A stretch of DNA of 64,000 nt. Origin: Entomortierella parvispora E1425 (Eukaryota; Fungi; Mortierellomycota). Positions 18,659-47,194 of the stretch are shown in pieces (position 1 is the stretch's first letter; each line of letters opens with the position of its first letter). The stretch covers positions 1,798,001 to 1,862,000 of the forward strand of contig BQFW01000011.1 in the NCBI GenBank assembly GCA_020891255.1. Reading direction: 5' to 3'. Under the pieces are notes generated by a model. The model saw nothing but the letters and a program-made list of their open reading frames with translations. It searched no databases and had not been told where the DNA came from. Position numbers and translations under genes: made by a program.

Positions 18659-19056
18659 TCGGAATGAGATTCTTTAATGTCTCCAAGCTTTGAGAAAAGT
18701 TGCCTTCTGGACTCCTGCTCTTGTGTGTCCTGATGTCCAAGGTCGGATGGAGGTTTCCTCTTGAAGACCATGCGCTCGACTTGTCCGCAAAAAAAAAAAA
18801 AAAAGAAAGAAAAAAAAGCCAAGCCACTTGCGGTTGCCACCAATATGACTATTTAAGGGTCTAACTCCTGCAGTTTTGGTCTTTGAGGGTGCGCAGGCGG
18901 ATGTTTGGTCGCTGATGCATCGCCGGGCGCCCTGCCTGTTGTTCTCCCGCTGAAGCAGAAACGTGGGAGCAGGAGTAAGCGTGGGCAAAATAGAAGAAGA
19001 TAGAAGAAGATAGAAGATAGAAGATGTATAACGACAGGAAGGATATTACTGCGCAG

Positions 19057-20168
19057 GAGTCATTTGTCCATGTTCTTCGAAGAGAAAGATCTAGGAGACG
19101 GGGGCACAGCAATGGGGCAAGATCATCAGTTGGCCACGTCGTTTACAAAAGACATGATGAAACACAACGCGTCGAGTCAGCTCCTCGGATGTGTTGTGTT
19201 TGTAGTAAAGGAGAAGGATCGCCACTTTGATTTCTAGGTGACTCAAGGATTTTTTTTTTTTTTGGACCCCTACACTTTCATGTGCCATTGAAATTGAGCT
19301 GTGGGTCAGAGAAAAAGAAAAAAACGTTTGTATTCGGAGAATTGTCGTTCGTCCTCTTTGAAGGCAAGAGATGATCAACGAAGGAGGGCTCAACCACAAC
19401 AATACACTTCTCGGACGAAAACACAAAAATAATCTATCATCATTCGAGGAAGGCAACTTTCATTTTCTGTCGAGTCATACACAAATTTTTGGCTGCAGAA
19501 ATCGAAAAAAGATCCATATCTGTGAGCCGTGTGGGCACAGCAAGAAAAAAAAAACGGTCAGGCAACGGCAACGAATGATCGTCCTTCAACACCCTCGTCC
19601 GACTCCCTGGAGCAATTGAAGGCAGCAGTTCTCCTACTCCGCCTTCGCATGGGCAAGAGGATTCCAAGTACGACAAGTACGAAAGAGGGAAACAGTGAGA
19701 CTCACGACCTCCCTCGGAGTTTTTATCTCCTGTGGCAAGATAACGAGAGGCGAAGCAAAATAATTTTCGAACAGTCAGCAGAGACAAGAAAATTGAGGGT
19801 GTCTCGCGGCGGAGTGAGGCCGCAGAACCTGGTGAATCGACCCATGACGGTGTCCTGCCTACTGATTGAGACTGGAGGAATGGCTGTCGAGCTGTGTGGG
19901 TGACCGGGCCTTTGTTTGCTACCAACCCGAGCGCTCTTGCTTCGGACAAACCCTTCGAGTCAGCGAAAAAAAATCCAATCGCAAAAAAACCAGGCACACT
20001 AAACAAAAAAAACATCGAGTCATCCAGTTCCTGGGTCTTATAAAAGGGTGCCCTTGTCCCCCTCCTCTTCCCTCCTCACTTTATCAACAACCACTATACC
20101 CCCACTCTCTCATCCCTATCCCTGATCGGCCTTCAACCAGTCCAACCAAACTCTCTAGAACTGACTCA
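19057..20168. promoter_or_regulatory. Cluster of seven TGACTC/GAGTCA (Gcn4/CpcA-type) sites upstream of the DAHP synthase
   Basis: Hexamers at 19057, 19174, 19239 (TGACTCA), 19472, 19957, 20017 and 20162 (TGACTCA). Confidence 0.6.
20039..20045 (+). promoter_or_regulatory. TATA box (TATAAAA) of the DAHP synthase gene
   Basis: Consensus TATAAAA 170 bp upstream of the ATG at 20209, followed by a pyrimidine-rich leader. Confidence 0.5.
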
Positions 20169-37934: not shown

Positions 37935-37943
37935 CTCTCCTGC
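37935..37943 (+). repeat. Left 9-bp target-site duplication CTCTCCTGC
   Basis: Identical direct copy at 47186-47194, each directly abutting the element terminus. Confidence 0.9.
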
Positions 37944-38081
37944 GGAAGCGTCTATTTGTCGGCCCGTCCGACAAGATCTTATTTGTCGTCCCTGCTCTCA
38001 ATTGCTCTTATTTGTCGTCCGTTCCCCCTTATTTGTCGGCCATGTCCCTATCTGTCGGCCGCTGATTTTAAGTTAACTACA
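37944..38081 (+). repeat. Left terminal inverted repeat
   Basis: CTATTTGTCGGCCCGTCCGACAA (37952-37974) is the exact reverse complement of 47155-47177; further shared blocks ATTGCTCTTATTTGTCG, TCCCCCTTATTTGTCGGC, TTTAAGTTAA and TTAACTACA. Confidence 0.92.
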
Positions 38082-38565
38082 CTAGCATTCCCAAGCGCTT
38101 TGACGCCACAATACGAAACTGGCAAAGCAGCCTGCGTTCTCCCCTACGATCATGACCTTCATCCTACTTCAGTTGTAAATATCACGAAGAAGACTCCGGT
38201 CGTAGGGGCATCTCCATTCTGCTCTTTGAAGTCCTCTCACCCTCTTTTCCTGGTATCCATCCTTTCTGAAGCCTGCAGCTCAAAAAAGCACAACTTTTTT
38301 TTTCTTTTTTTTTTTTTTTTTTTTTTTGGGAGACATGGCTTCAATGATCATCTCTCCTACAATTGTCCGCTGCCTTCAATTGTCCGCTGCATGAAGACAG
38401 TAATACTCCACACTATTAATATAAGTTTATGTTCTTTTATTAGGAAAACAGGGCTTTACAAAAATTATCCATTACCACCTCTCAAGATTGGGATATTATT
38501 CTCCTCTTATTCTCCTCTTTCCTGCTCTAATTCTACACTATCTGCAGGCCGTTGTATGTAGATAT

Positions 38566-41067
38566 CTAGAAGTTGCCTTTGGACTTCTTGGAAGCCATGG
38601 ATAATTCTTGGCTGGACTTGATCCTTTTTGTTGGGACCTTCCCCTTGGGCGGTAAAACTATCGGGTCTTTTACGATCTGCAGGCCCGTCATTTCTTCAAT
38701 TACTTTTTTTCATCTGTGCCTCGGCTTTTTTCATCGCTTTAGCGTAAATAGCTGCCAGCTTTGGATGGTCTGCTCCCATTCGCACCAACTCCTTTGAATT
38801 GCCCTGCAACTCAGCAAAGCGGCTTCGCCGAGCCTGCTCTCTTCGTTCTACAGCGGGGATAGCACCGTACTCGGGGAATAGCTTCGAAGCAGATTCCATA
38901 TACGTCAAGCATGGAGTCCGAACGCGCTTTTCGGACAGAGAAGGATGTCGGGGACCTAGGAAGGCAAGGTCGGGTCCTCTTGTAACCGGAGAAACAGACA
39001 AGAAGGGCCGAGACGAAAGATTGAGGTTCTCGGTGTCTTGCCAGCGCTCTTGGAACCACCGCATGGGCACCAGTTGGATATGGTATCTAAAGGCATGATC
39101 TCTCCGCATCATGTAGAAAAAGTGTTTGCACACAATCCCCACATTCTGCAACTTGAGACATGTGCACAGATATCCTCCATCCCTGAAGAGAAGAACCCAC
39201 GATGCGTCGTTTTCTTCGAGATGAGAAACAAGGTGGATACTCTCAATCTCCGAGTCGCTCAGTTCACTTAGCAAGGCCCCCAATGTCGACAGGCGAACTT
39301 CTTGTCGAGTAGATAGACGTATCTGCCCCTCGTCCTCTGGGTCCCTAAAATATCGTCGCAACTTGGTCAGCCATTACAAAAAAAAAAAAAAGGTTAGATG
39401 GATTATAGTTGACAGGCGACCGTTCCCCAGCATTTACTCTACTTACTTCATCGTGCTCATGGAGTTCTGCTTCATAAGAAAAAGAAGAGGAGATTTCCTC
39501 TTTCATCTTGTTTTGACCGAATCGTCCTAGGAATCGCTCGTTTTCCGATATGACGGCTTGAAAGGTATCATATCCCTTATACCTCTCCTTGACACCGTCT
39601 TTGGAGTCGTCGAGGAAAGCGAGGTACCTATTTTGGATGCTCTCATCCGCGATCTTCTTTTGAATGACTTGGAAGAGTTCATCCAAGCCTGTGTTGCCGT
39701 TCGCCTTGAGTTTGATCAGATGGTGTGCTTTCTCAACTCGCTGTGAAGCCTGTATCCCAAGCGTGAGGAGTGTCCCCACCATGGCTTAGCCCAATAAGGG
39801 CTTCGACTGTAGATATACTGTAGCCTCTTGTCAAGTGGACTCCCGGGGACCAAATCAGGGAATGCAAAGTCCAGAGTTCTCTGCCACTCTTCTTCAAAAT
39901 TTCGCCGAGTTATAGTTCGCTGAGCAATCCAGAATCCGTTTTTGAACTTTTCGTACTCTTCCTTTCCGACCTGGCAGGAGATGTTCGAAAGATTCTTCGA
40001 AAAAGTGCCACAGACAGTTTACCATGTGAGTATTGGGGGACAACTTAATGAGCGCCGACTCAAATGCCTTGTCATCGTCGCTAACGACCACATGCGGATG
40101 CCGATTGCCGTTCGCCTTGAATAAATGGTAAAGAACAAATAAAAAATCTGATCTTGTCTCCTTGCTAAGAAGGGCGCATGCCACAACTCTGGTTGCACCC
40201 TCAGCATCGACAATCGTGGTGACGTTGAGGTGCATTTTGAAGCGGTTGGTGTTGTATGTTGTGTCGTTCATCACTACATCATGGTATCGTGAATAGAGAT
40301 CCCTTTGGAGTGGATCCATCCAAAAGACGCGTCTGATGACCGAATTGTTGTCCGTCTGAACTTTAGCATACCATCGCTCATCCTTCTTGCGGAAACCCGT
40401 CAACATTGCTACCAGACGCTGGGCGTTGTTCGCGCCGTGAGAGCCGGTAGTTCGTCTTGCCATTGCGTTCGACACTCTTCTCCCAGAGAAGTACCGCTCG
40501 GGGTTTCGCCTCTTGAGAACTTCCCTGATAACAGGCATGCTCGCCCCTGCTGCTGAAAGTTCTTGAGCACATTCCCTCATGGGTGTTGTTAACCTCTGTC
40601 TCGAGGGACTAAATATCTCGGCGTGAGCTATCATCTTGTGGTTGTGAGCCGCAGTGTCGTTCTTCCGATAAACGGTACAGTCCTTCCCGTCCTTGCTTGC
40701 TGCACGGAGTTGAATGTACCATTTGCAGTCGCAGCGAATCGAGGTCTTATTTCTTTCCAACTCAGGTACAGAGGTCTTCTTAGGACTATGCTTCCTCCCT
40801 TTTGTACATTCTAGAACCTCTGTAAAAAAGGGACTGCGTTAGTCGTTCGGCCTTGCCTCGCACACGCCAGCATTGCAAGGAAACGTACTCATCCACTCGC
40901 GTGATAGCTTTTTGCTTGAGGCGATTCGAATATCAAATCCACACGAAAGGGACCACTGTCGAACGGCATTTATGGCATCCGAGAAAGAATTGAAGATTTG
41001 AGAGTCCAGTTCCTCGGGCAAAGGAGTGTGTGGATTCTAGAAATGGCAGAACAACATCAGACACAGC

Positions 41068-41098
<31 letters not shown>

Positions 41099-42930
41099 GT
41101 GCAACGAACCTTCTCGATAGGAACGAAAACCCTTTCATGTTCTGTATCCTGGAAATTCTTGGAGTCCTGGTGGTCCTCACAATCAGATTCTTCTTCATAC
41201 CAGGGTTCGCGCTCATCTTCACGAGCATCAGCCTCCCCTCCACACGGGCTTTCATAGTTGGAATAGAGATTGCCCTCAAGATCCCGATCGTCGTAATCAT
41301 GGTCGTTGTCATCAAGGTCGTCATCATAATCCTCCGATGGACAATGAAAGCGATTATCGCTGAGGAGATATCGGTCGTAGTAGATATAAAGGTCTTCCCC
41401 ATCCTGAGCATCAAGGATGTCAGGGGTTCCCTCTCTTTTCTCCTTCTCCTTCTCTTCAATAACAGGGATGTCATGATCCCCGCCCTTCCCTTGAACAACC
41501 GGGATATCGGAAGCGATATTGACAACTCTGTCGGCAACTCTTTCATCGCGCCTTTTTATGGCGGTATTGTGAGTCACCTGAGTTATTCCGTGAGATTTTC
41601 TGATGATAAAAGGTGACTGTTGAGACTGGTCTGGAGGGGTGGGGTCCTCGATAAACAAGGAAGACACGCCCTGCAAGGACAATTGGACAGTATGTAAGTA
41701 ATTGGACTCAGTAGAAAGTGATCAACGGCAACATATACGTACTTTGTTCGTCCAGTCTTGTCCGGTCAGAACATACATATACCACAGCCGATGGTTCTTG
41801 CTAGTGGCCACCGTCCAGGCTTTTATGAGATGAAATGGCCGGCACTCGCTCTCAATAACATTAAGAGCAATGACACCACAGGAGCCTCCATCGATGCCTT
41901 GTTGGGGTACCTCCAATTCATGGACTTTCTTGAATGCCGTATATTCTGGCACCATGCAATGTTTCAACATCCTGGCAATGGTGCGACCAACCTCCTCACC
42001 TAATTTATCCGATTGTCCCCCATCCAGCGAGTGGCCGAAGGACGTTCGTTTGGCGGCAAAGTCGATGACCACAGGAGCCCAATGGCGTCCAATGTTGACA
42101 ATCGCAAATGCCTTCCTTTCGGCAATGGCGCAATGAAGGATGGCGGTCTTGATGTAGTCCCACTGCTTCTTTTGTTGCTCCCGCTCATGGACATTCAGAT
42201 TAATACGAAGGGCTGTCGAAGGAACGAAGATATCATCGCCGCTGGTTTGAGCTGCAAACTCTTTCATAACCGCGTCAATGACTTGTCCCGACAGCCACTC
42301 TTCGTGCCTAAGCTGGAGGAGGTCGGTGATACTGGTGACGGTACCATTGTAAGCCTTAAAGCCGTGTCTAAGGATAAAAACGGCCAGATTAGATGTGTTA
42401 AAAACAAACTGCCATGGCCAGGGATTATGGATGTACAGTATAACTCACCCCAAAATGTTGGGACTCTGAAGAAGAATGGACCTCATTTTCCGAACGACTT
42501 CCGCTCCGATCTTAACAGGGCCATTTAACCAAGTCAACATATCACGAAGCAAAGCTGACATATCCATTAGGTCATGGATTTGCTTCATGGCCTGAAGGGC
42601 GGGAAAGGAGACGAATCCCACCTTGCCAATAAGTACGACACCCGGTCGAGAATCGTTACTAATCAGTTCTATCGCGGCCGCGACTGATGCTGGGTGAGGG
42701 ATCGGCCTGTTGATACTCAGGTCAGATAGTGTCACTTGAAGCTCGTCGAAGTAGGTCGCAAGTCGCTCTTCGTTGGTGAAGAACGTGGGAGTGACTTTCG
42801 TAAGGACAGGTGGGAACTCCATATGGATTAACTCCCAGCCCGTGAGATGTCTCTGCCACCAGAATTCAAGAAGATCCGCGTCGTCGAGAAGCTCGAGCGA
42901 GCCGTTAACATGGCTTTCAGGGAGCGACAT
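38566..42930 (-). pseudogene. Spliced Ulp1-like protease / FAR1 / MULE transposase / SWIM fusion gene with three frameshifts; exons 42930-42449, 42367-41743, 41670-41110, 41036-40889, 40819-39447, 39361-38566
   Basis: Ulp1: LRHEEWLSGQVID, HWAPVVIDF, PQQGIDGGSCGVIAL. FAR1: FNSFSDAINAVRQW..GFDIRI...CTKG...RCDCKW...HNH. MULE: VMNDTTYNTN, VSDDDKAF, CLWH, QRVEKAH. SWIM: CTCLKLQNVGIVCKH. All five introns are GT-AG and in phase. Frameshifts at ~40000, ~39780 and ~38705. Confidence 0.85.
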
Positions 42931-43390
42931 GAGGTGAGGTTTCCAAGCAAAAGGGTATTTGGTGGTTAAGGGAGATAAGAGGTGGTGGTGGAGGTTCAGT
43001 TGGCCGCAAGGCCTTTTAGTGCCTTAAACGCGTAACGGCTGCCACAAAAAAAAACGTCAAGTACTGATTTTTGGCCGATTCTCACGGTGCTCACAAGAAA
43101 TTACCCCTGAGCCCCTGAACCTTCTTCTCGTTTTTGAGTCGAAGGTGCCTACTTTCGCACTTCACTCTTGAATTTATTTCTCGTGTTCAAGTTCTTGCCC
43201 AAAAAGAAACATTCCGCTGAGCAATAAATACGGCACATACTTTCGTCTTTTCTACTACTATTATCTGCACCTGCCTTACTTAGTTACAATCAACCCCATT
43301 ACTGTGAATCTTCAGGTGAGTTAAGTACACCTCTTGTCCGTGGAACTCACTCTCAATTGCTCTAACTTCCTTTTTTTTATTGGACAGTAG

Positions 43391-44431
43391 ATGGACGAGG
43401 ATCACCCTTTCTTTGCCGAGCTTAGCCGCCATGTTGCATTGGCCTACGACCTCCCTTTTGATGCTCCCTGGTTAGCTCTCTGCCCTGAAAAGACGTATCG
43501 GTTCACTTGGACTGAGCTCCTCCAGGTTGCCAATGCCTTGGCTCTTCCAATAACCTTAAAGTTGTCAAATGGAGCGATCGTTCCAAGACTGCAGGCGCTA
43601 TGCATGCTTTGCTTTCGATTGAGTTATCCTCATCTTATCAAGGATATGGCCGCTCTCTTTTCTCGTGATTCTCCTTTTGTGTCGCACGCAATCAAGACCA
43701 TTAACGAGTACATCCTTTCCGAATGGAAGCATCTTTTGGAGTTTGACCACACCCGCCTACGAGATGAATATCTGGAGGGTTTAGCAGCGCGAGTTCAGTT
43801 TATGAAAGGGAGGCTGACAAACTGCTGGGGATTTGTTTCCTGGACTCATATTGAGATCTGCCGACCTAAGGAAAGGCCAAACCTGACATATTCTACCCAG
43901 AAACAGATGCACTCAATGAAATATCAGTCGGTTTGCTGTCCAGATGGTATAATTGCCCATTTGAGCGGTCCTCATCCGGGAGCAGAAGCTGACACGGTCA
44001 CTTTGACCAAGTCTTGTCTTCCAATCATTTTGAATGCCCACTGTCATAACACTCTTGGCGCTCCGATGGTCATTTATGGTGATGGGAATTATCCTGATTG
44101 CTTTCAAGTTTGTCGTCCATATCGCGGTCCAGTCCTCAGCAAGTCCGAGATCCGCTTCAACTTATCCATGAGACGTCCCCTTCTTTGTGCTGACAAAGGA
44201 TTTGACTTCATTGACAATAACTGGAGCTGGTTGGCCCATAGTAACATTCTGAAAATGAGACAGACTAAGTACTACATCGTGTCTGCTCTGTTCGCCAATA
44301 TTCTCACTTGCATTCGTAGAGGGAACAGCGTCACCTCGTATTTCGGGATGGATCCGCCAACTCTTGAAAATTACCTTACTCCAAAACACCAGTGGATGCC
44401 AGAATCCCTTCCAAGTCAAGATTTATTGTAA
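43391..44431 (+). CDS. PIF/Harbinger-type (DDE_Tnp_4-like) transposase homologue with degenerate catalytic motif
   Basis: Intact 346-aa ORF: ALCMLCFRLSYP, NCWGFVSWT..ICRP, HSMKYQSVCCPDGIIAHLSGP, IYGDGNYP, FNLSM, GNSVTSYFGMDPPTLENYL. A 5'-UTR intron (GTGAGT 43316, CTAAC 43362, TAG 43390) precedes the ATG. Confidence 0.85.
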   Translation: MDEDHPFFAELSRHVALAYDLPFDAPWLALCPEKTYRFTWTELLQVANALALPITLKLSNGAIVPRLQALCMLCFRLSYPHLIKDMAALFSRDSPFVSHAIKTINEYILSEWKHLLEFDHTRLRDEYLEGLAARVQFMKGRLTNCWGFVSWTHIEICRPKERPNLTYSTQKQMHSMKYQSVCCPDGIIAHLSGPHPGAEADTVTLTKSCLPIILNAHCHNTLGAPMVIYGDGNYPDCFQVCRPYRGPVLSKSEIRFNLSMRRPLLCADKGFDFIDNNWSWLAHSNILKMRQTKYYIVSALFANILTCIRRGNSVTSYFGMDPPTLENYLTPKHQWMPESLPSQDLL

Positions 44432-44454
44432 TAAATTGTATCACTGCATGGTCG

Positions 44455-46075
44455 CTAGCTTTCTGGTCGCCGTGGTGCTGCGGCTGTGGCCAGAGATATA
44501 CTGGGTTGAAATGTTGTCTGAGGGCGCGCCAGCATTGGAGGCCATTGTATGGAGGTCGAGTGAGGCTGAGGCTGAGGTAGGCCAGAAGTCCTTGAGTAAG
44601 ATTTCCATACAATATCCTGTAAATCACGGATTTCATTTCTGAATGTGAGAAACGTTCCATGCATTTCTGACCTCAAATCCGACAGCACTGAAATGACAGC
44701 AACGGTATTCCTATTCAAATCGTCGATATTCCTATTCAAATCGTCGATACTCCTATTCAAATCGTCGATCTTGGATACTGTGTTCCTGCCGAGATCTTCA
44801 ATGATGGTTGTGTTGTCTGTCATGTTCCTTCTAAGTTCCTTAATTCTAGCGGTAGTCTCAATCGCTACGACCTGTCTTATTGACTGCACTTCGTCCGCTA
44901 TTCTCCTTTGCTCCTTCGCAAATCCCCGAGGCATCCGCATTGTCTTTTGTTGTTTTTGTGCTCCGAGGTGGTGTCACAGAGCGGTGTTTGGGCGAAGGTA
45001 CCATGGCTGACAACGTAGCTGGAGGGTAGAGTAGCTCTTGTTGCTGCTGATGAATGGGCAAAGCAACTCCACGATGACTTTTCGTATCGCCTGGGGCAGC
45101 TCGAACATGCGTGACGTCGGCCCTATTGGAGCTTCGTGTTTCGCTATCATATTGTTCGCCCGCTGAATGTCCATCCTCATCCTCATTCTCTTCTTCCTCG
45201 TCTTCCGGCTCATCGTCGTTGTCATCGTCTTCACTGCCGCGCGATACAGTATCATCAAATCTTAGTTTCTTGATTCTCCGTCTGCGATCCTCTGTGACAA
45301 GATTCTGTCGGGTTGCTGTTGCGGGAGATGCCACGCGCGCCCTCTCTTCCGCCGTGAGTTCCGATGTTTCCTGCTTGATCCTTAATAAAGTTCGGTCGTA
45401 ATCGCGCAAAAGACGACAGAGCTCCAACAACCGAGTTGAGAATGCGAGATCCACCCCAGTCGCGGAAGTGGCTAATTTCTCATAGGCGTTGTAGTCAGCA
45501 CAGAGTCTGCCAACAGCCGAATATAGGGCACCTGCTGTAACGCCTCTCAGACTCGGCTCGGCACGCTCTAGCTCTGTAGAAAGCTGGGTATACAATTCGC
45601 CGCCTCTCGTCAGACTCATGCCTCTCAGTTCATCCTGCGCACTAGCACAGAATTGTTGGAGTCGCTGAACAAGGAATTGGACGGCCAAGAATATCCTCCG
45701 TTGGTTTCCACCACTGGGAAGGGCTTTTAGTCCACAGTACCTCTTTGACCCAGTGGCAGGCATTTCAGTTGAGAGGTCAGCTAAATGAGGAAAAGGGTAG
45801 TTCAGTGAAATGCCAGGAGAGCAAAGGAATCTCAATTGACTCAATTAATTACCTTCCCGAATGCTGTCTTCCACTGAAAGAACCCTACCGGACTGGAGTG
45901 AATCGACATCTTCAGGATCCTCAAATATATTCCGGTAGTGCTTCAGATGGACAGTCTGTTCTCTCGAGAGCGTCGCAGAAGCAGGTTGTGGGGATGGATT
46001 TCGTTTTTGAGACATCTCGTTGTGAGTGATGGATTCGTAATAAAATGAAGCAATTGTTGTGTTGGAGGGCTGCAT
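44455..46075 (-). CDS. Putative Myb/SANT-like partner protein of the Harbinger-type module with acidic tract and C-terminal coiled coil; exons 46075(or 46015)-45853, 45780-45002, 44943-44455
   Basis: First intron has GTAATT donor and TTTAG acceptor in phase. Segment GELYTQLSTEL...VTAGALYSAVGRLCADY...ATSATGVD...LLELCRLL fits the helix pattern of Harbinger ORF2 proteins, with the usual Trp absent. Converges on the transposase-like ORF with a 23-bp gap. The second intron (58 nt, AAG acceptor) is weaker. Confidence 0.6.
44707..44769. repeat. 21-bp tandem repeat x3 encoding IDDLNR(S/N) heptads on the minus strand
   Basis: ATTCCTATTCAAATCGTCGAT x2 plus ACTCCTATTCAAATCGTCGAT. Confidence 0.9.
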
Positions 46076-47040
46076 CGCGTGGTCACGTGACTATAGTCGA
46101 AGATGCCCTGGTGGTGCAGCGGCCCCGAGCCGCCCCGTGCCTGGACCATGAGGAGGGAAAGACGGGCTAGCCGCTCCGAAGGCGCTCTCGTCGAGGTCGA
46201 GCCCTCTCTCTTTGTCGTTCGAACCTGGCGTGGTCATATTCGCAAATAGATGGTTTCTGTTTTTTTTTTTTTTGGTTCTCTTCCGGGTTTTCCTGAAGTT
46301 TTCTCGCCTGCTCGTATGGAACCAGTGTCCATGTAGCAGAAGCAGCAGCGAAGAAATAGTAGGAAAGAAGTATGTGACAAAGACAACTTTCCCCTATCTT
46401 TCTCCCATTGCACCCTTTTACACCAGGGTAGTGTTGGCTTAGAGGCAGATCCAAACAACCTTGGCTGTAGTTTTGCACCTTGTTCATCATACAAGTGTGC
46501 CTTCTGGGTCAATTGCAGATACTACGGCAGTAGTCAATGGATATGATATTAGTGAAGGACAATGGCATGGCTTTCAACAGCCTTCGCGTACTTTGAAAAT
46601 GAGAATTCGCTTCCCAAATCCCAAACGTCTAGAATGCAGTTTAGCAGTTCAAAGAAAACAAAGATGATGAGGAAGACACCTTCCCTACAAGAGATACCGT
46701 ATTGAGAATCCAAAGGTCTCTTTTTAGTGATAGACTGCATCATTTTTAGATGCTTCTTTTTGGTACTAACCGAGCTTCAACTGGCTAAAATGATGAACAA
46801 GCGAAAGAGCTGCAAATACGATGACCTTGTCAAAATCTCGCCACGCTCACATCCGTACTTGTCATGATTTTTCTTAGTTCGAGAGTGAAAACGTCTTTTC
46901 ATATTCGTCCAAAGCTGATGATCCCTTCTCTGAGGGCCTTGTAACTGGATCAGTACGCGTGTCCAGCTATTTAACATCAACCTCTTTTTGATTCCAACTT
47001 CTATCCAACTACACTTTCAACTTTTGTTCTCTAGAATATT

Positions 47041-47185
47041 TGTAGTTAAGTGGGGCTCAATTTAACTTAAATAAAGCGACCGACATATACGGGAGCAGCC
47101 GACAAATAAGGGGGAGCAGCCGACAAATAAGAGCAATGAGCCGACAAATAAGAATTGTCGGACGGGCCGACAAATAGTCTAGTCC
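47041..47185 (-). repeat. Right terminal inverted repeat
   Basis: Contains CGACAAATA at 47100, 47121, 47142 and 47168; inverted match to 37944-38081. Confidence 0.92.
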
Positions 47186-47194
47186 CTCTCCTGC
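47186..47194 (+). repeat. Right 9-bp target-site duplication CTCTCCTGC
   Basis: Identical to 37935-37943. Confidence 0.9.

What the first reader, a model, noticed from the sequence alone, without database searches (positions are those of the whole stretch)
43391..46075. Intact but catalytically dead Harbinger-type transposase with a convergent Myb-like partner
The family motif GFIDGT reads GFVSWT (TCC for the first catalytic Asp, needing at least two changes from an Asp codon). YNGHKR reads YSTQKQ, and the R..VE..F glutamate region reads RPLLCADKGF; GD..Y is kept. Yet the 346-codon frame and structural motifs are undamaged and the partner gene retains its introns. Loss of catalysis with an intact frame is the signature of domesticated Harbinger proteins such as plant ALP1. 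Here it appears to have occurred inside another transposon rather than in the host (inference).
Basis: partly seen in the sequence, partly recalled or inferred. Interest (0 to 1): 0.75.

Follow-up and report, generated by a model that had tools for sequence, protein, structure and literature searches.

The report
Dead Harbinger transposase inside a Mutator transposon
A recently active Mutator-type jumping gene of the soil fungus Entomortierella parvispora carries, as internal cargo, the two genes of a different (Harbinger) transposon whose cutting enzyme has lost its active site yet stayed intact, which suggests that one transposon has put another's proteins to its own use.

Summary
ORF 43391-44431 (+) is a PIF/Harbinger DDE_Tnp_4 homologue (Pfam E 9.6e-14). 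In a 30-sequence alignment only this protein lacks the first catalytic Asp (D150S, codon TCC). It also has E268D and seven more changes at near-invariant positions, while the HTH plus RNase-H-like fold is modelled confidently (pLDDT 90).

The convergent partner is the subfamily's cognate second gene. It has no Pfam hit, and its best fold match is the Myb-type DNA-binding domain of Sap1 (Z 9.4).

Both genes lie inside a 9.2-kb Mutator-like element (37944-47185) with long TIRs and a 9-bp TSD. Two further copies, 99.8% identical, carry the same ORF. An older deletion derivative (87% identical) already has the altered motifs.

Selection since that split is moderately supported: omega 0.49, LRT p 0.015; no frame breaks against seven in the derivative's remnant.

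Caveats:
- The partner carries a +1 frameshift in all three young copies, cutting off its coiled coil.
- The ORF is not annotated.
- When D150S arose is unknown.

My verdict is a nuclease-dead Harbinger pair kept as MULE cargo: a new variant of transposase domestication with unknown function. The scan already holds notes on this stretch and on likely sister copies.

The parts
43391..44431 (+). 346-codon Harbinger/PIF (DDE_Tnp_4) transposase homologue with an N-terminal HTH and an RNase-H-like core. It is not annotated in the public record.
   Evidence: ORF list. Pfam E 9.6e-14. 2799 relatives at E<=1e-3. Model pLDDT 90.3. Best folds are piggyBac, Tn5 and ISCth4 transposases, Z 9.1-8.0. No gene with this product is on record.
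43838..43840 (+). Codon 150, TCC = Ser, at the position of the first catalytic Asp (the GFIDGT motif reads GFVSWT).
   Evidence: Asp in 29/29 relatives. Codon read. It lies in predicted strand beta1, residues 145-155.
43889..43906 (+). The YSGHKR motif reads YSTQKQ (G169T, H170Q, R172Q).
   Evidence: The same reading is present in the older copy L005.
44081..44083 (+). Second catalytic Asp (D231, YGD motif), retained.
   Evidence: Invariant column in alignment A1. Codon GAT.
44180..44197 (+). Third catalytic region: R264L, V267A, E268D, W269K (RxxVEW reads LLCADK).
   Evidence: Shared by L005. It lies in predicted helix 251-277.
45853..46015 (-). Partner gene exon 1, counted from ATG 46015.
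   Evidence: Matches database protein P0152 (EMPS_08304). Homology with L005 begins at 46017.
45781..45852 (-). 72-nt intron of the partner gene (GTAATT...TAG), containing an in-frame stop.
   Evidence: Spliced out in P0152. Lower identity and a 4-nt indel against L005. A relative, L010, has the same two-part layout.
44858..45780 (-). Partner exon 2: a conserved helical domain of about 110 residues (Myb-type/Sap1-like by fold), an acidic linker, then a premature stop after the frameshift.
   Evidence: Homologous to the convergent partner of relative L003, E 3e-9. Model pLDDT 76. Sap1 DNA-binding domain 6ext_A at Z 9.4, rmsd 3.1, 102 of 105 residues.
44945..44955 (-). Site of a +1 frameshift, relative to paralogue L005, that truncates the partner. 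It lies in a short A-run.
   Evidence: DNA alignment. P0153 reads straight through. Present in all three young copies.
44455..44940 (-). 161-codon ORF that is still open: the former C-terminal coiled coil of the partner, including three 21-nt repeats at 44703-44772. Its stop lies 23 nt from the transposase stop.
   Evidence: Omega against L005 is 0.37, p 0.003.
37944..47185 (.). The enclosing 9.2-kb Mutator-like element (MULE).
   Evidence: Two more copies at 99.8% identity are bounded exactly at these ends. Independent TSDs.
37944..38076 (+). Left TIR of the MULE, with repeated CTTATTTGTCGG motifs.
47062..47185 (-). Right TIR of the MULE.
37935..37943 (.). Target-site duplication CTCTCCTGC, left copy.
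47186..47194 (.). Target-site duplication CTCTCCTGC, right copy.
38696..40760 (-). MULE transposase region, in three ORF pieces. Its integrity was not verified.
   Evidence: PF10551 MULE E 5.9e-19 and ZSWIM RNaseH-like E 3.9e-14. ORFs listed.
41722..42930 (-). Ulp1-like (Peptidase_C48) region of the MULE. The match is weak.
   Evidence: PF02902 E 0.0017, below the curated cut-off. Called as a gene in the sister loci.

Best explanation
Shown:
- The 346-codon ORF is a PIF/Harbinger transposase homologue that can no longer coordinate metal at the first catalytic position (D150S).
- It also has E268D and seven further changes at near-invariant, mostly active-site-proximal positions, yet keeps its HTH and RNase-H-like fold.
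- It stands in the native tight convergent arrangement with its subfamily's second gene. That gene encodes a helical DNA-binding-type domain (Myb-type/Sap1-like by fold) followed by a coiled coil.
- The pair has no Harbinger ends of its own. It is internal cargo of an autonomous-looking 9.2-kb MULE of Entomortierella parvispora that has transposed recently, giving three copies at 99.8% identity with different 9-bp TSDs.
- The pair has been inherited within that MULE lineage for a long time.

Inferred:
- A Harbinger element inserted into the MULE at the DNA level, since the intron and the gene spacing are kept, and then lost its termini.
- The pair has since been kept by selection for a non-catalytic role that serves the MULE. 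The most likely form is a DNA-binding and adaptor complex: the partner binds DNA and dimerises, and the dead transposase docks on it. This follows the canonical Harbinger division of labour.
- The complex could help in end recognition or nuclear import, or counteract silencing as the host-domesticated ALP1/ALP2 and HDP1/HDP2 pairs do.

In the currently active copies the partner has recently been split by a frameshift, so the module may be partly decaying.
For: Identity and active site:
- Pfam DDE_Tnp_4 E 9.6e-14.
- The window departs at 9 of 39 columns that are at least 90% conserved (R82L, D150S, G151W, Q163P, G169T, H200A, R264L, V267A, E268D). Its 29 relatives depart at 0-5.
- The nearest relative P0001 (57% identity) keeps D, D and E.

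Fold:
- pLDDT 90.3 and pTM 0.90. S150 lies on beta1, D231 after beta4, D268 on the following long helix.
- The best structural matches are DDE transposases and integrases, Z 9.1-7.

Partner is cognate:
- Convergent partners lie 9-29 nt from the transposase stop in relatives L002, L003, L010 and L011.
- The L003 partner matches the window partner at E 3e-9.
- The Sap1 Myb-type DNA-binding domain matches at Z 9.4; the next hit is 6.5 (PMC6053445).

MULE context:
- TIRs and 9-bp TSDs.
- Copies L009 and L007 are 99.8% identical and carry the same ORF at 100% and 99.7% amino-acid identity.
- MULE domain E 5.9e-19.

Long association:
- L005 (87% nucleotide identity) joins the MULE left end to codon 161 of the same ORF and then the partner.
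- L006 has related TIRs around a partner remnant.

Selection after the motif changes:
- L005 shares YSTQKQ, AEAD and LCADKGF.
- Window against L005 for codons 161-346: pN/pS 0.36; codon-model omega 0.49, LRT p 0.015.
- 0 indels in the window against 7 in the L005 remnant.
- Polarised amino-acid changes: 4 on the window branch, 11 on the L005 branch.
- A neutral ORF would stay stop-free with probability 0.013-0.037 at 10-15% divergence.
Against: - All three young copies carry a +1 frameshift that removes the partner's coiled coil. By analogy with Sap1, the coiled coil would be needed for DNA binding.
- In the older copy L005 the transposase half was deleted and decayed while the partner stayed intact. 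So the two genes are not always kept together.
- The ORF was not called by an RNA-hinted AUGUSTUS annotation in any copy.
- The selection signal is moderate. It rests on 161 codons and one comparison, and high transition bias (kappa 6.8) weakens the simple count test.
- The window branch is four times longer than that of P0001, 0.79 against 0.18. This fits relaxed constraint as well as a changed function.
- Codon 150 cannot be dated, because that region is deleted in L005.
- The assembly is Nanopore-based and polished with short reads (PMC8759367), so single-base indels inside repeats are not fully trustworthy.
Confidence: 0.5

Rival explanations
1. Functionless hitchhiker. A Harbinger element nested in a MULE, died, and is simply carried along. 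The open frame reflects purifying selection that ended not long ago, plus luck.
For: - The partner is frameshifted in all three young copies.
- The transposase half was lost without consequence in L005.
- There is no gene model and no record of the protein.
- The window branch is long, 0.79 against 0.18.
- The three young copies are too similar (99.8%) to carry any selection signal of their own.
Against: - Omega is 0.49 with p 0.015 since a split at which the motif changes already existed.
- There are 0 frame-breaking indels against 7 in the neutral remnant.
- The probability of a stop-free frame under neutrality is 0.013-0.037 at 10-15% divergence.
- Nine departures cluster around the active site while the fold is modelled at pLDDT 90.
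Confidence: 0.27
2. Competitor or repressor. The dead transposase, with or without the partner, acts as a dominant-negative that titrates partner proteins or the ends of active Harbinger elements in the same genome. This would benefit the MULE or the host.
For: - The HTH domain and overall fold are kept while catalysis is lost.
- Scan notes report other Harbinger loci in this genome, including one described as intact (unchecked).
Against: - No close active relative was found. The nearest known protein is 57% identical and comes from a metagenome.
- Nothing links the module to Harbinger ends.
Confidence: 0.1
3. Host-beneficial cargo. The pair is effectively a host gene pair, ALP1/HDP-like, that merely happens to lie in a mobile element.
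For: - Loss of catalytic residues together with a kept frame and a kept partner mirrors host-domesticated pairs (PMC4671723, PMC5339849, PMC9710019).
- A solo partner-like gene survives at L006 between host genes.
Against: - The pair is multi-copy and bounded by MULE TIRs and TSDs at three different loci.
- No single-copy syntenic orthologue is known.
- The partner is frameshifted.
Confidence: 0.06
4. The enzyme is still an active nuclease with a non-canonical site, with another residue compensating for Asp150.
For: Two acidic residues remain at the second and third positions (D231, D268).
Against: - Ser replaces an Asp that is invariant in 29/29 relatives.
- The neighbouring near-invariant residues G151, G169, H200 and R264 are also changed.
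- No new acidic residue appears near position 150. E155 is also present in the catalytically canonical P0001.
- There are no Harbinger TIRs or a 3-bp TSD around the module.
Confidence: 0.03

Closest known systems
Arabidopsis ALP1/ALP2 and HDP1/HDP2 (host-domesticated Harbinger transposase plus Myb-like pairs)
   Same: - A transposase-derived protein with substituted catalytic residues (ALP1 has DGA for DDE; PMC4671723).
- It is kept together with the derivative of the Myb-like second gene.
- The Harbinger ends are lost.
- There are signs of purifying selection.
   Different: - Those are single-copy host genes conserved across plants, acting in PRC2 or histone acetyltransferase complexes (PMC7282668, PMC5339849).
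- Here the pair is multi-copy cargo of a mobile MULE in a fungus.
- Its function is unknown and its partner is currently frameshifted.
- There is no sequence relationship beyond the superfamily.
Insect and vertebrate co-domesticated PIF pairs (DPLG7/DPM7, APLG/APM, HARBI1/NAIF1)
   Same: Both genes of one Harbinger insertion are retained side by side (PMC9710019).
   Different: [quoted passage not shown] Here there are at least three near-identical copies that move with a MULE.
Autonomous PIF/Harbinger elements (DDE_Tnp_4 transposase plus Myb-like ORF, short TIRs, 3-bp TSD)
   Same: - Transposase family, N-terminal HTH and the two-gene organisation.
- Free relatives (L002, L003, L010, L011) show the same tight convergent layout.
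   Different: - The catalytic triad reads S-D-D instead of D-D-E.
- No Harbinger TIRs or 3-bp TSD are present.
- Mobility is provided by MULE ends with a 9-bp TSD.
MULEs with extra genes (Pack-MULEs, Ulp1-bearing KI-MULEs, VANDAL elements with the VANC anti-silencing gene)
   Same: A Mutator-like element that carries genes other than its transposase. This one also has a weak Ulp1-like region.
   Different: - The cargo is the complete two-gene core of another DNA transposon superfamily, not host gene fragments.
- My literature searches found no report of this. They cover only the held library.
Fission yeast Sap1 (Myb-type four-helix DNA-binding domain plus coiled coil)
   Same: - It is the best structural match of the partner's conserved domain: Z 9.4, 102 of 105 residues.
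- It has the same domain order of DNA-binding domain then coiled coil (PMC6053445).
   Different: - No detectable sequence similarity.
- The model is of medium confidence (pLDDT 76).
- Z below about 13 is not decisive for helical bundles.

Membership tests
PIF/Harbinger transposase (Pfam DDE_Tnp_4) | Significant match to the family profile | tested here: met
   E 9.6e-14, 51.7 bits against a cut-off of 24.8. 1041 relatives at E<=1e-10.
PIF/Harbinger transposase (Pfam DDE_Tnp_4) | Intact D-D-E catalytic triad | tested here: not met
   The triad reads S150-D231-D268. The relatives have D 29/29, D 29/29 and E 28/28.
PIF/Harbinger transposase (Pfam DDE_Tnp_4) | HTH plus RNase-H-like fold | tested here: met
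   pLDDT 90.3. Matches to piggyBac, Tn5, ISCth4 and integrases at Z 9.1-7. Residues 40-117 match sigma-region-4-type HTH domains at Z about 5.
Autonomous Harbinger element | Own TIRs and a 3-bp TSD flanking the two genes | tested here: not met
   Only chance-level inverted repeats lie around 42800-47100.
Autonomous Harbinger element | Second gene encoding a Myb/SANT-like DNA-binding protein | tested here: inconclusive
   No Pfam Myb hit and no sequence hit in PDB. The fold matches the Myb-type Sap1 DNA-binding domain at Z 9.4, GT-1 at 5.3 and NgTRF at 4.8. It is homologous to the convergent partners of catalytically canonical relatives.
Host-domesticated transposase (ALP1/HDP1/HARBI1 type) | Single-copy, immobile locus with syntenic orthologues in other species | tested here: not met
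   Three copies at different loci are bounded by MULE TIRs and TSDs. Synteny in other species could not be tested.
Host-domesticated transposase (ALP1/HDP1/HARBI1 type) | Purifying selection after loss of transposition function | tested here: met
   The signal is moderate: omega 0.49, p 0.015; indel asymmetry 0 against 7; neutral-ORF simulation.
Host-domesticated transposase (ALP1/HDP1/HARBI1 type) | Expression and a cellular function | not testable with these tools
There is no gene model.
Mutator-like element (the enclosing transposon) | Long TIRs, a 9-bp TSD, a MULE-domain transposase, and several copies with different TSDs | tested here: met
   TIRs of at least 125 bp. TSD CTCTCCTGC in the window and AGAGAAGAT in L009. 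PF10551 E 5.9e-19. Copies at 99.8% identity.

The most novel reading that the evidence does not exclude
A Mutator-like transposon has itself 'domesticated' the nuclease-dead transposase and Myb-type partner of a Harbinger element. It uses them as its own accessory module, for example for chromatin targeting or anti-silencing. Non-catalytic functions of Harbinger pairs would then arise first in the service of transposons. Host genes of the ALP1/ALP2 or HDP1/HDP2 kind could be later captures of such ready-made modules.
Probability: 0.3. Interest if true: 0.8.

Novelty: new variant of a known kind. Interest (0 to 1): 0.6.

Why it matters
Catalytically dead Harbinger transposases paired with their Myb-like partners are a recurrent source of host chromatin regulators in plants, insects and vertebrates. 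How and where the non-catalytic function first arises is not known.

This case has three useful properties:
- The pair has lost catalysis and its own ends.
- It has been inherited, apparently under constraint, as cargo of a different and still mobile transposon.
- There are young copies, an older deletion derivative and catalytically canonical free relatives to compare it with.

If the module helps the MULE, this would be transposon-level exaptation and a plausible intermediate on the way to host domestication. The idea is directly testable in a culturable fungus that already has public DNA and RNA reads. If the module does nothing, it is still a clean example of a compound DNA transposon, and a warning that intact 'transposase' frames in genomes need not be transposases.

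Tried and rejected
- **Word-based protein search.** The single protein found only one relative. The 30-sequence profile found only five, none named or from this species. Cluster look-up of the ten nearest relatives returned no organism names.
- **Sequence search against solved structures.** Nothing for the transposase or for the partner profile.
- **Foldseek against PDB.** Only weak rows for both models.
- **ESM Atlas.** The feature search and the shape search for the partner were uninformative.
- **Harbinger TIRs and 3-bp TSD.** The search around the module gave only chance-level repeats. Relatives' contigs were too short to show their ends.
- **Profile comparison with a distant partner.** The partner profile showed no similarity to the partner of the more distant relative L011.
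- **The search of earlier findings by sequence.** It was blank.
- **Simple synonymous/non-synonymous count test.** It gave p 1.5e-4. I downgraded it because it ignores the strong transition bias. The codon-model LRT (p 0.015) is the figure to trust.
- **ATG 46075 as the partner start.** Rejected in favour of 46015.
- **Exon joining.** Exons were searched by reference, and the spliced product was used only as the database protein P0152.
Full report
**What is there.** ORF 43391-44431 (+) has 346 codons. It matches Pfam DDE_Tnp_4, the PIF/Harbinger transposase domain, at E 9.6e-14, well above the curated cut-off. An exhaustive HMMER search found 2799 relatives at E<=0.001. The nearest are a 345-aa metagenome protein, P0001, at 57% identity and then proteins at 35-45% identity. 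The window is contig BQFW01000011.1 of Entomortierella parvispora E1425 (Mortierellomycota); locus L008 is 100% identical over 13 kb.

**Active site.** I aligned the ORF with 29 relatives (A1).
- The first catalytic Asp is present in all 29 relatives and is Ser in the window. The codon is TCC at 43838-43840, against GAT in P0001.
- The second Asp (D231) is kept.
- The third position is Asp instead of a Glu that is present in 28/28 relatives (E268D).
- Counting columns that are at least 90% conserved among the relatives, the window departs at 9 of 39: R82L, D150S, G151W, Q163P, G169T, H200A, R264L, V267A and E268D. Each relative, tested the same way, departs at 0-5.
- No new acidic residue appears near position 150. 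E155 is also present in the canonical P0001.

**Fold.** With A1 as input, AlphaFold2 gives pLDDT 90.3 and pTM 0.90. S150 lies on strand 145-155, D231 just after strand 227-229, and D268 on helix 251-277, which is the RNase-H-like layout.
- No Harbinger transposase structure exists in PDB by sequence.
- An all-against-representatives structural search gives piggyBac, Tn5 and ISCth4 transposases and retroviral integrases (Z 9.1 to about 6) for residues about 124-335.
- It gives sigma-region-4-type HTH domains (Z about 5) for residues 40-117.
- I had no access to model coordinates, so distances in the active site were not measured.

**The partner.** On the minus strand the public annotation has EMPS_08304 (P0152, 361 aa).
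- It has exon 1 at 46015-45853, a 72-nt intron at 45852-45781 (GTAATT...TAG), and exon 2 running to a stop at 44858.
- I searched the exons by reference and did not join them myself. The spliced product was used only as P0152.
- Pfam finds nothing.

The gene is nevertheless the cognate second gene of this Harbinger subfamily.
- Relatives with canonical triads have a convergent gene ending 9-29 nt from the transposase stop: L002, L003, L010 and L011.
- The L003 partner matches the window partner at E 3e-9 over its N-terminal domain.
- L010 shows the same two-part layout.
- A model of the conserved domain (5 sequences, pLDDT 76) has as its best solved match the DNA-binding domain of fission yeast Sap1: Z 9.4, rmsd 3.1, 102 of 105 residues. 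The next row is at 6.5, with plant GT-1 at 5.3 and NgTRF at 4.8.
- Sap1's domain is described as a Myb-type HTH with a fourth helix, followed by a coiled coil needed for DNA binding (PMC6053445).

So 'Myb-like' is plausible at the fold level only. For helical bundles the tool warns that Z below about 13 is not decisive.

**A break in the partner.** The paralogue EMPS_03913 (P0153, 488 aa, locus L005) reads straight from the linker into a C-terminal coiled coil. In the window one extra base in a short A-run near 44945-44955 shifts the frame. EMPS_08304 therefore ends at 44858, and the coiled coil survives as a separate open 161-codon ORF (44940-44455) ending 23 nt from the transposase stop. All three young copies share this. 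The assembly is Nanopore polished with Illumina (PMC8759367). Most differences between the copies are homopolymer-length indels, so this single base needs read-level confirmation.

**The enclosing element.**
- Inverted repeats 37944-38076 and 47062-47185 carry repeated CTTATTTGTCGG motifs.
- They are flanked by a perfect 9-bp direct repeat, CTCTCCTGC.
- Inside, on the minus strand, lie a MULE-domain transposase region (PF10551, E 5.9e-19) and a weak Ulp1-like region.
- Two other contigs hold the same 9.2-kb unit at 99.8% identity, bounded exactly at these ends. L009 has its own TSD, AGAGAAGAT. L007 is interrupted by an LTR retrotransposon.
- Both carry the 346-codon ORF, at 100% and 99.7% amino-acid identity.

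The Harbinger pair thus moves as cargo of a recently active MULE. No Harbinger TIRs or 3-bp TSD remain around it. The kept intron and the native gene spacing point to DNA-level nesting of a whole Harbinger followed by loss of its ends. That is an inference.

**Older derivatives.**
- L005 (87% nucleotide identity) joins the MULE left subterminal region directly to codon 161 of the same ORF, followed by the partner. It is an internal-deletion derivative of a MULE that already held the module.
- Its transposase remnant has seven frame-breaking indels and D231N, but it shares YSTQKQ, AEAD and LCADKGF with the window. So at least six of the active-site-proximal changes, E268D included, predate the split.
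- Codon 150 lies in the deleted part and cannot be dated.
- L006 has related TIRs around a decayed partner gene only, at 71% nucleotide identity.

**Selection.**
- Window against P0001: dN/dS is about 0.2, with dS saturated.
- In a quick ML tree the two are sisters (support 100), with end branches of 0.79 for the window and 0.18 for P0001. Protein evolution therefore sped up on the window lineage.
- Window against L005, codons 161-346: pN/pS is 0.36.
- A pairwise codon model with kappa 6.8 gives omega 0.49 and an LRT against omega = 1 of p 0.015. For partner exon 2 it gives 0.55 (p 0.03), and for the coiled-coil ORF 0.37 (p 0.003). One of the two branches is a pseudogene, so the functional lineage's omega should be lower.
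- Polarised by P0001, 4 amino-acid changes fall on the window branch and 11 on the L005 branch; 15 are unresolved.
- The window has no indel where the L005 remnant has seven.
- Simulated neutral substitution alone leaves the frame stop-free in 1.3-3.7% of trials at 10-15% divergence.

Together these give moderate, not overwhelming, support for maintenance of the frame after the active site had changed.

**Reading.** The best-supported picture is a nuclease-dead Harbinger transposase and its DNA-binding partner retained as an accessory module of a MULE.
- By the established Harbinger division of labour, the Myb-like protein binds DNA and brings the transposase into the nucleus (summarised in PMC9710019). 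By analogy with ALP1/ALP2 and HDP1/HDP2 (PMC4671723, PMC7282668, PMC5339849), a non-catalytic DNA-binding and adaptor role is most likely. That role is inferred and was not tested.
- Against it stand the partner frameshift in the active copies, the loss of the transposase half in L005, the missing gene model, and the absence of any expression data.
- The main rival is a hitchhiking relic whose constraint ended recently.

**Limits.**
- The whole genome could not be searched for further copies.
- All close relatives come from unnamed metagenome or Logan contigs.
- The literature searches found no report of a MULE carrying a Harbinger gene pair. They cover only the held library.
- Scan notes on this same stretch, and on what are probably the sister copies, exist. 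I used them as leads only.

Noticed in passing
L007:14968-20036 (equivalent to window 41047-41051): The third MULE copy is split by an insertion of about 5 kb that encodes RVT_1, RNase H and integrase, i.e. an LTR retrotransposon. The two BLAST pieces overlap by 5 nt, which looks like its 5-bp target duplication.
   Followed up: partly
L006:9841-11775: A unit of about 1.9 kb has TIRs related to the window's MULE. It encloses only a decayed partner-like gene (P0154, EMPS_02567) and lies between a PRP21-like gene and a chitin synthase gene. It is either a miniature derivative or a possible solo-partner locus.
   Followed up: partly
window 45320-45778 (-): The second gene of this Harbinger subfamily resembles fission yeast Sap1 in predicted fold and in domain order (Myb-type four-helix domain, then coiled coil). 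Whether Sap1 itself descends from a Harbinger partner gene is an open lead. There is no sequence similarity.
   Followed up: no
window 43871-46017 against L005:9998-12059: Substitutions between the young and old copies are strongly transition-biased: 135 transitions against 63 transversions, with codon-model kappa 4-7. This might reflect cytosine methylation or deamination of repeats.
   Followed up: no
window 39778 and other homopolymer sites (38282, 38704, 40908, 41072, 43046, 46260, 46721): Most differences between the three 99.8%-identical MULE copies are single-base length changes in homopolymers. One (an extra C at 39778 in L009) lies in the MULE transposase region. These may be Nanopore assembly errors, and they affect which copy looks intact.
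   Followed up: partly
window 44703-44772: Three tandem 21-nt repeats lie inside the coiled-coil ORF and encode repeated DDLNR(N/S)I heptads.
   Followed up: no
window 37952-37974 and 47155-47177: The outermost 23 nt of each TIR are themselves internally palindromic (TTGTCGG...CCGACAA), so each end holds a small hairpin-capable motif.
   Followed up: no
L009:510-8176 and 18810-19370: The second MULE copy sits in a cluster of tandem genes of about 184 aa with faint RicinB-lectin/Inhibitor_I66 hits.
   Followed up: no
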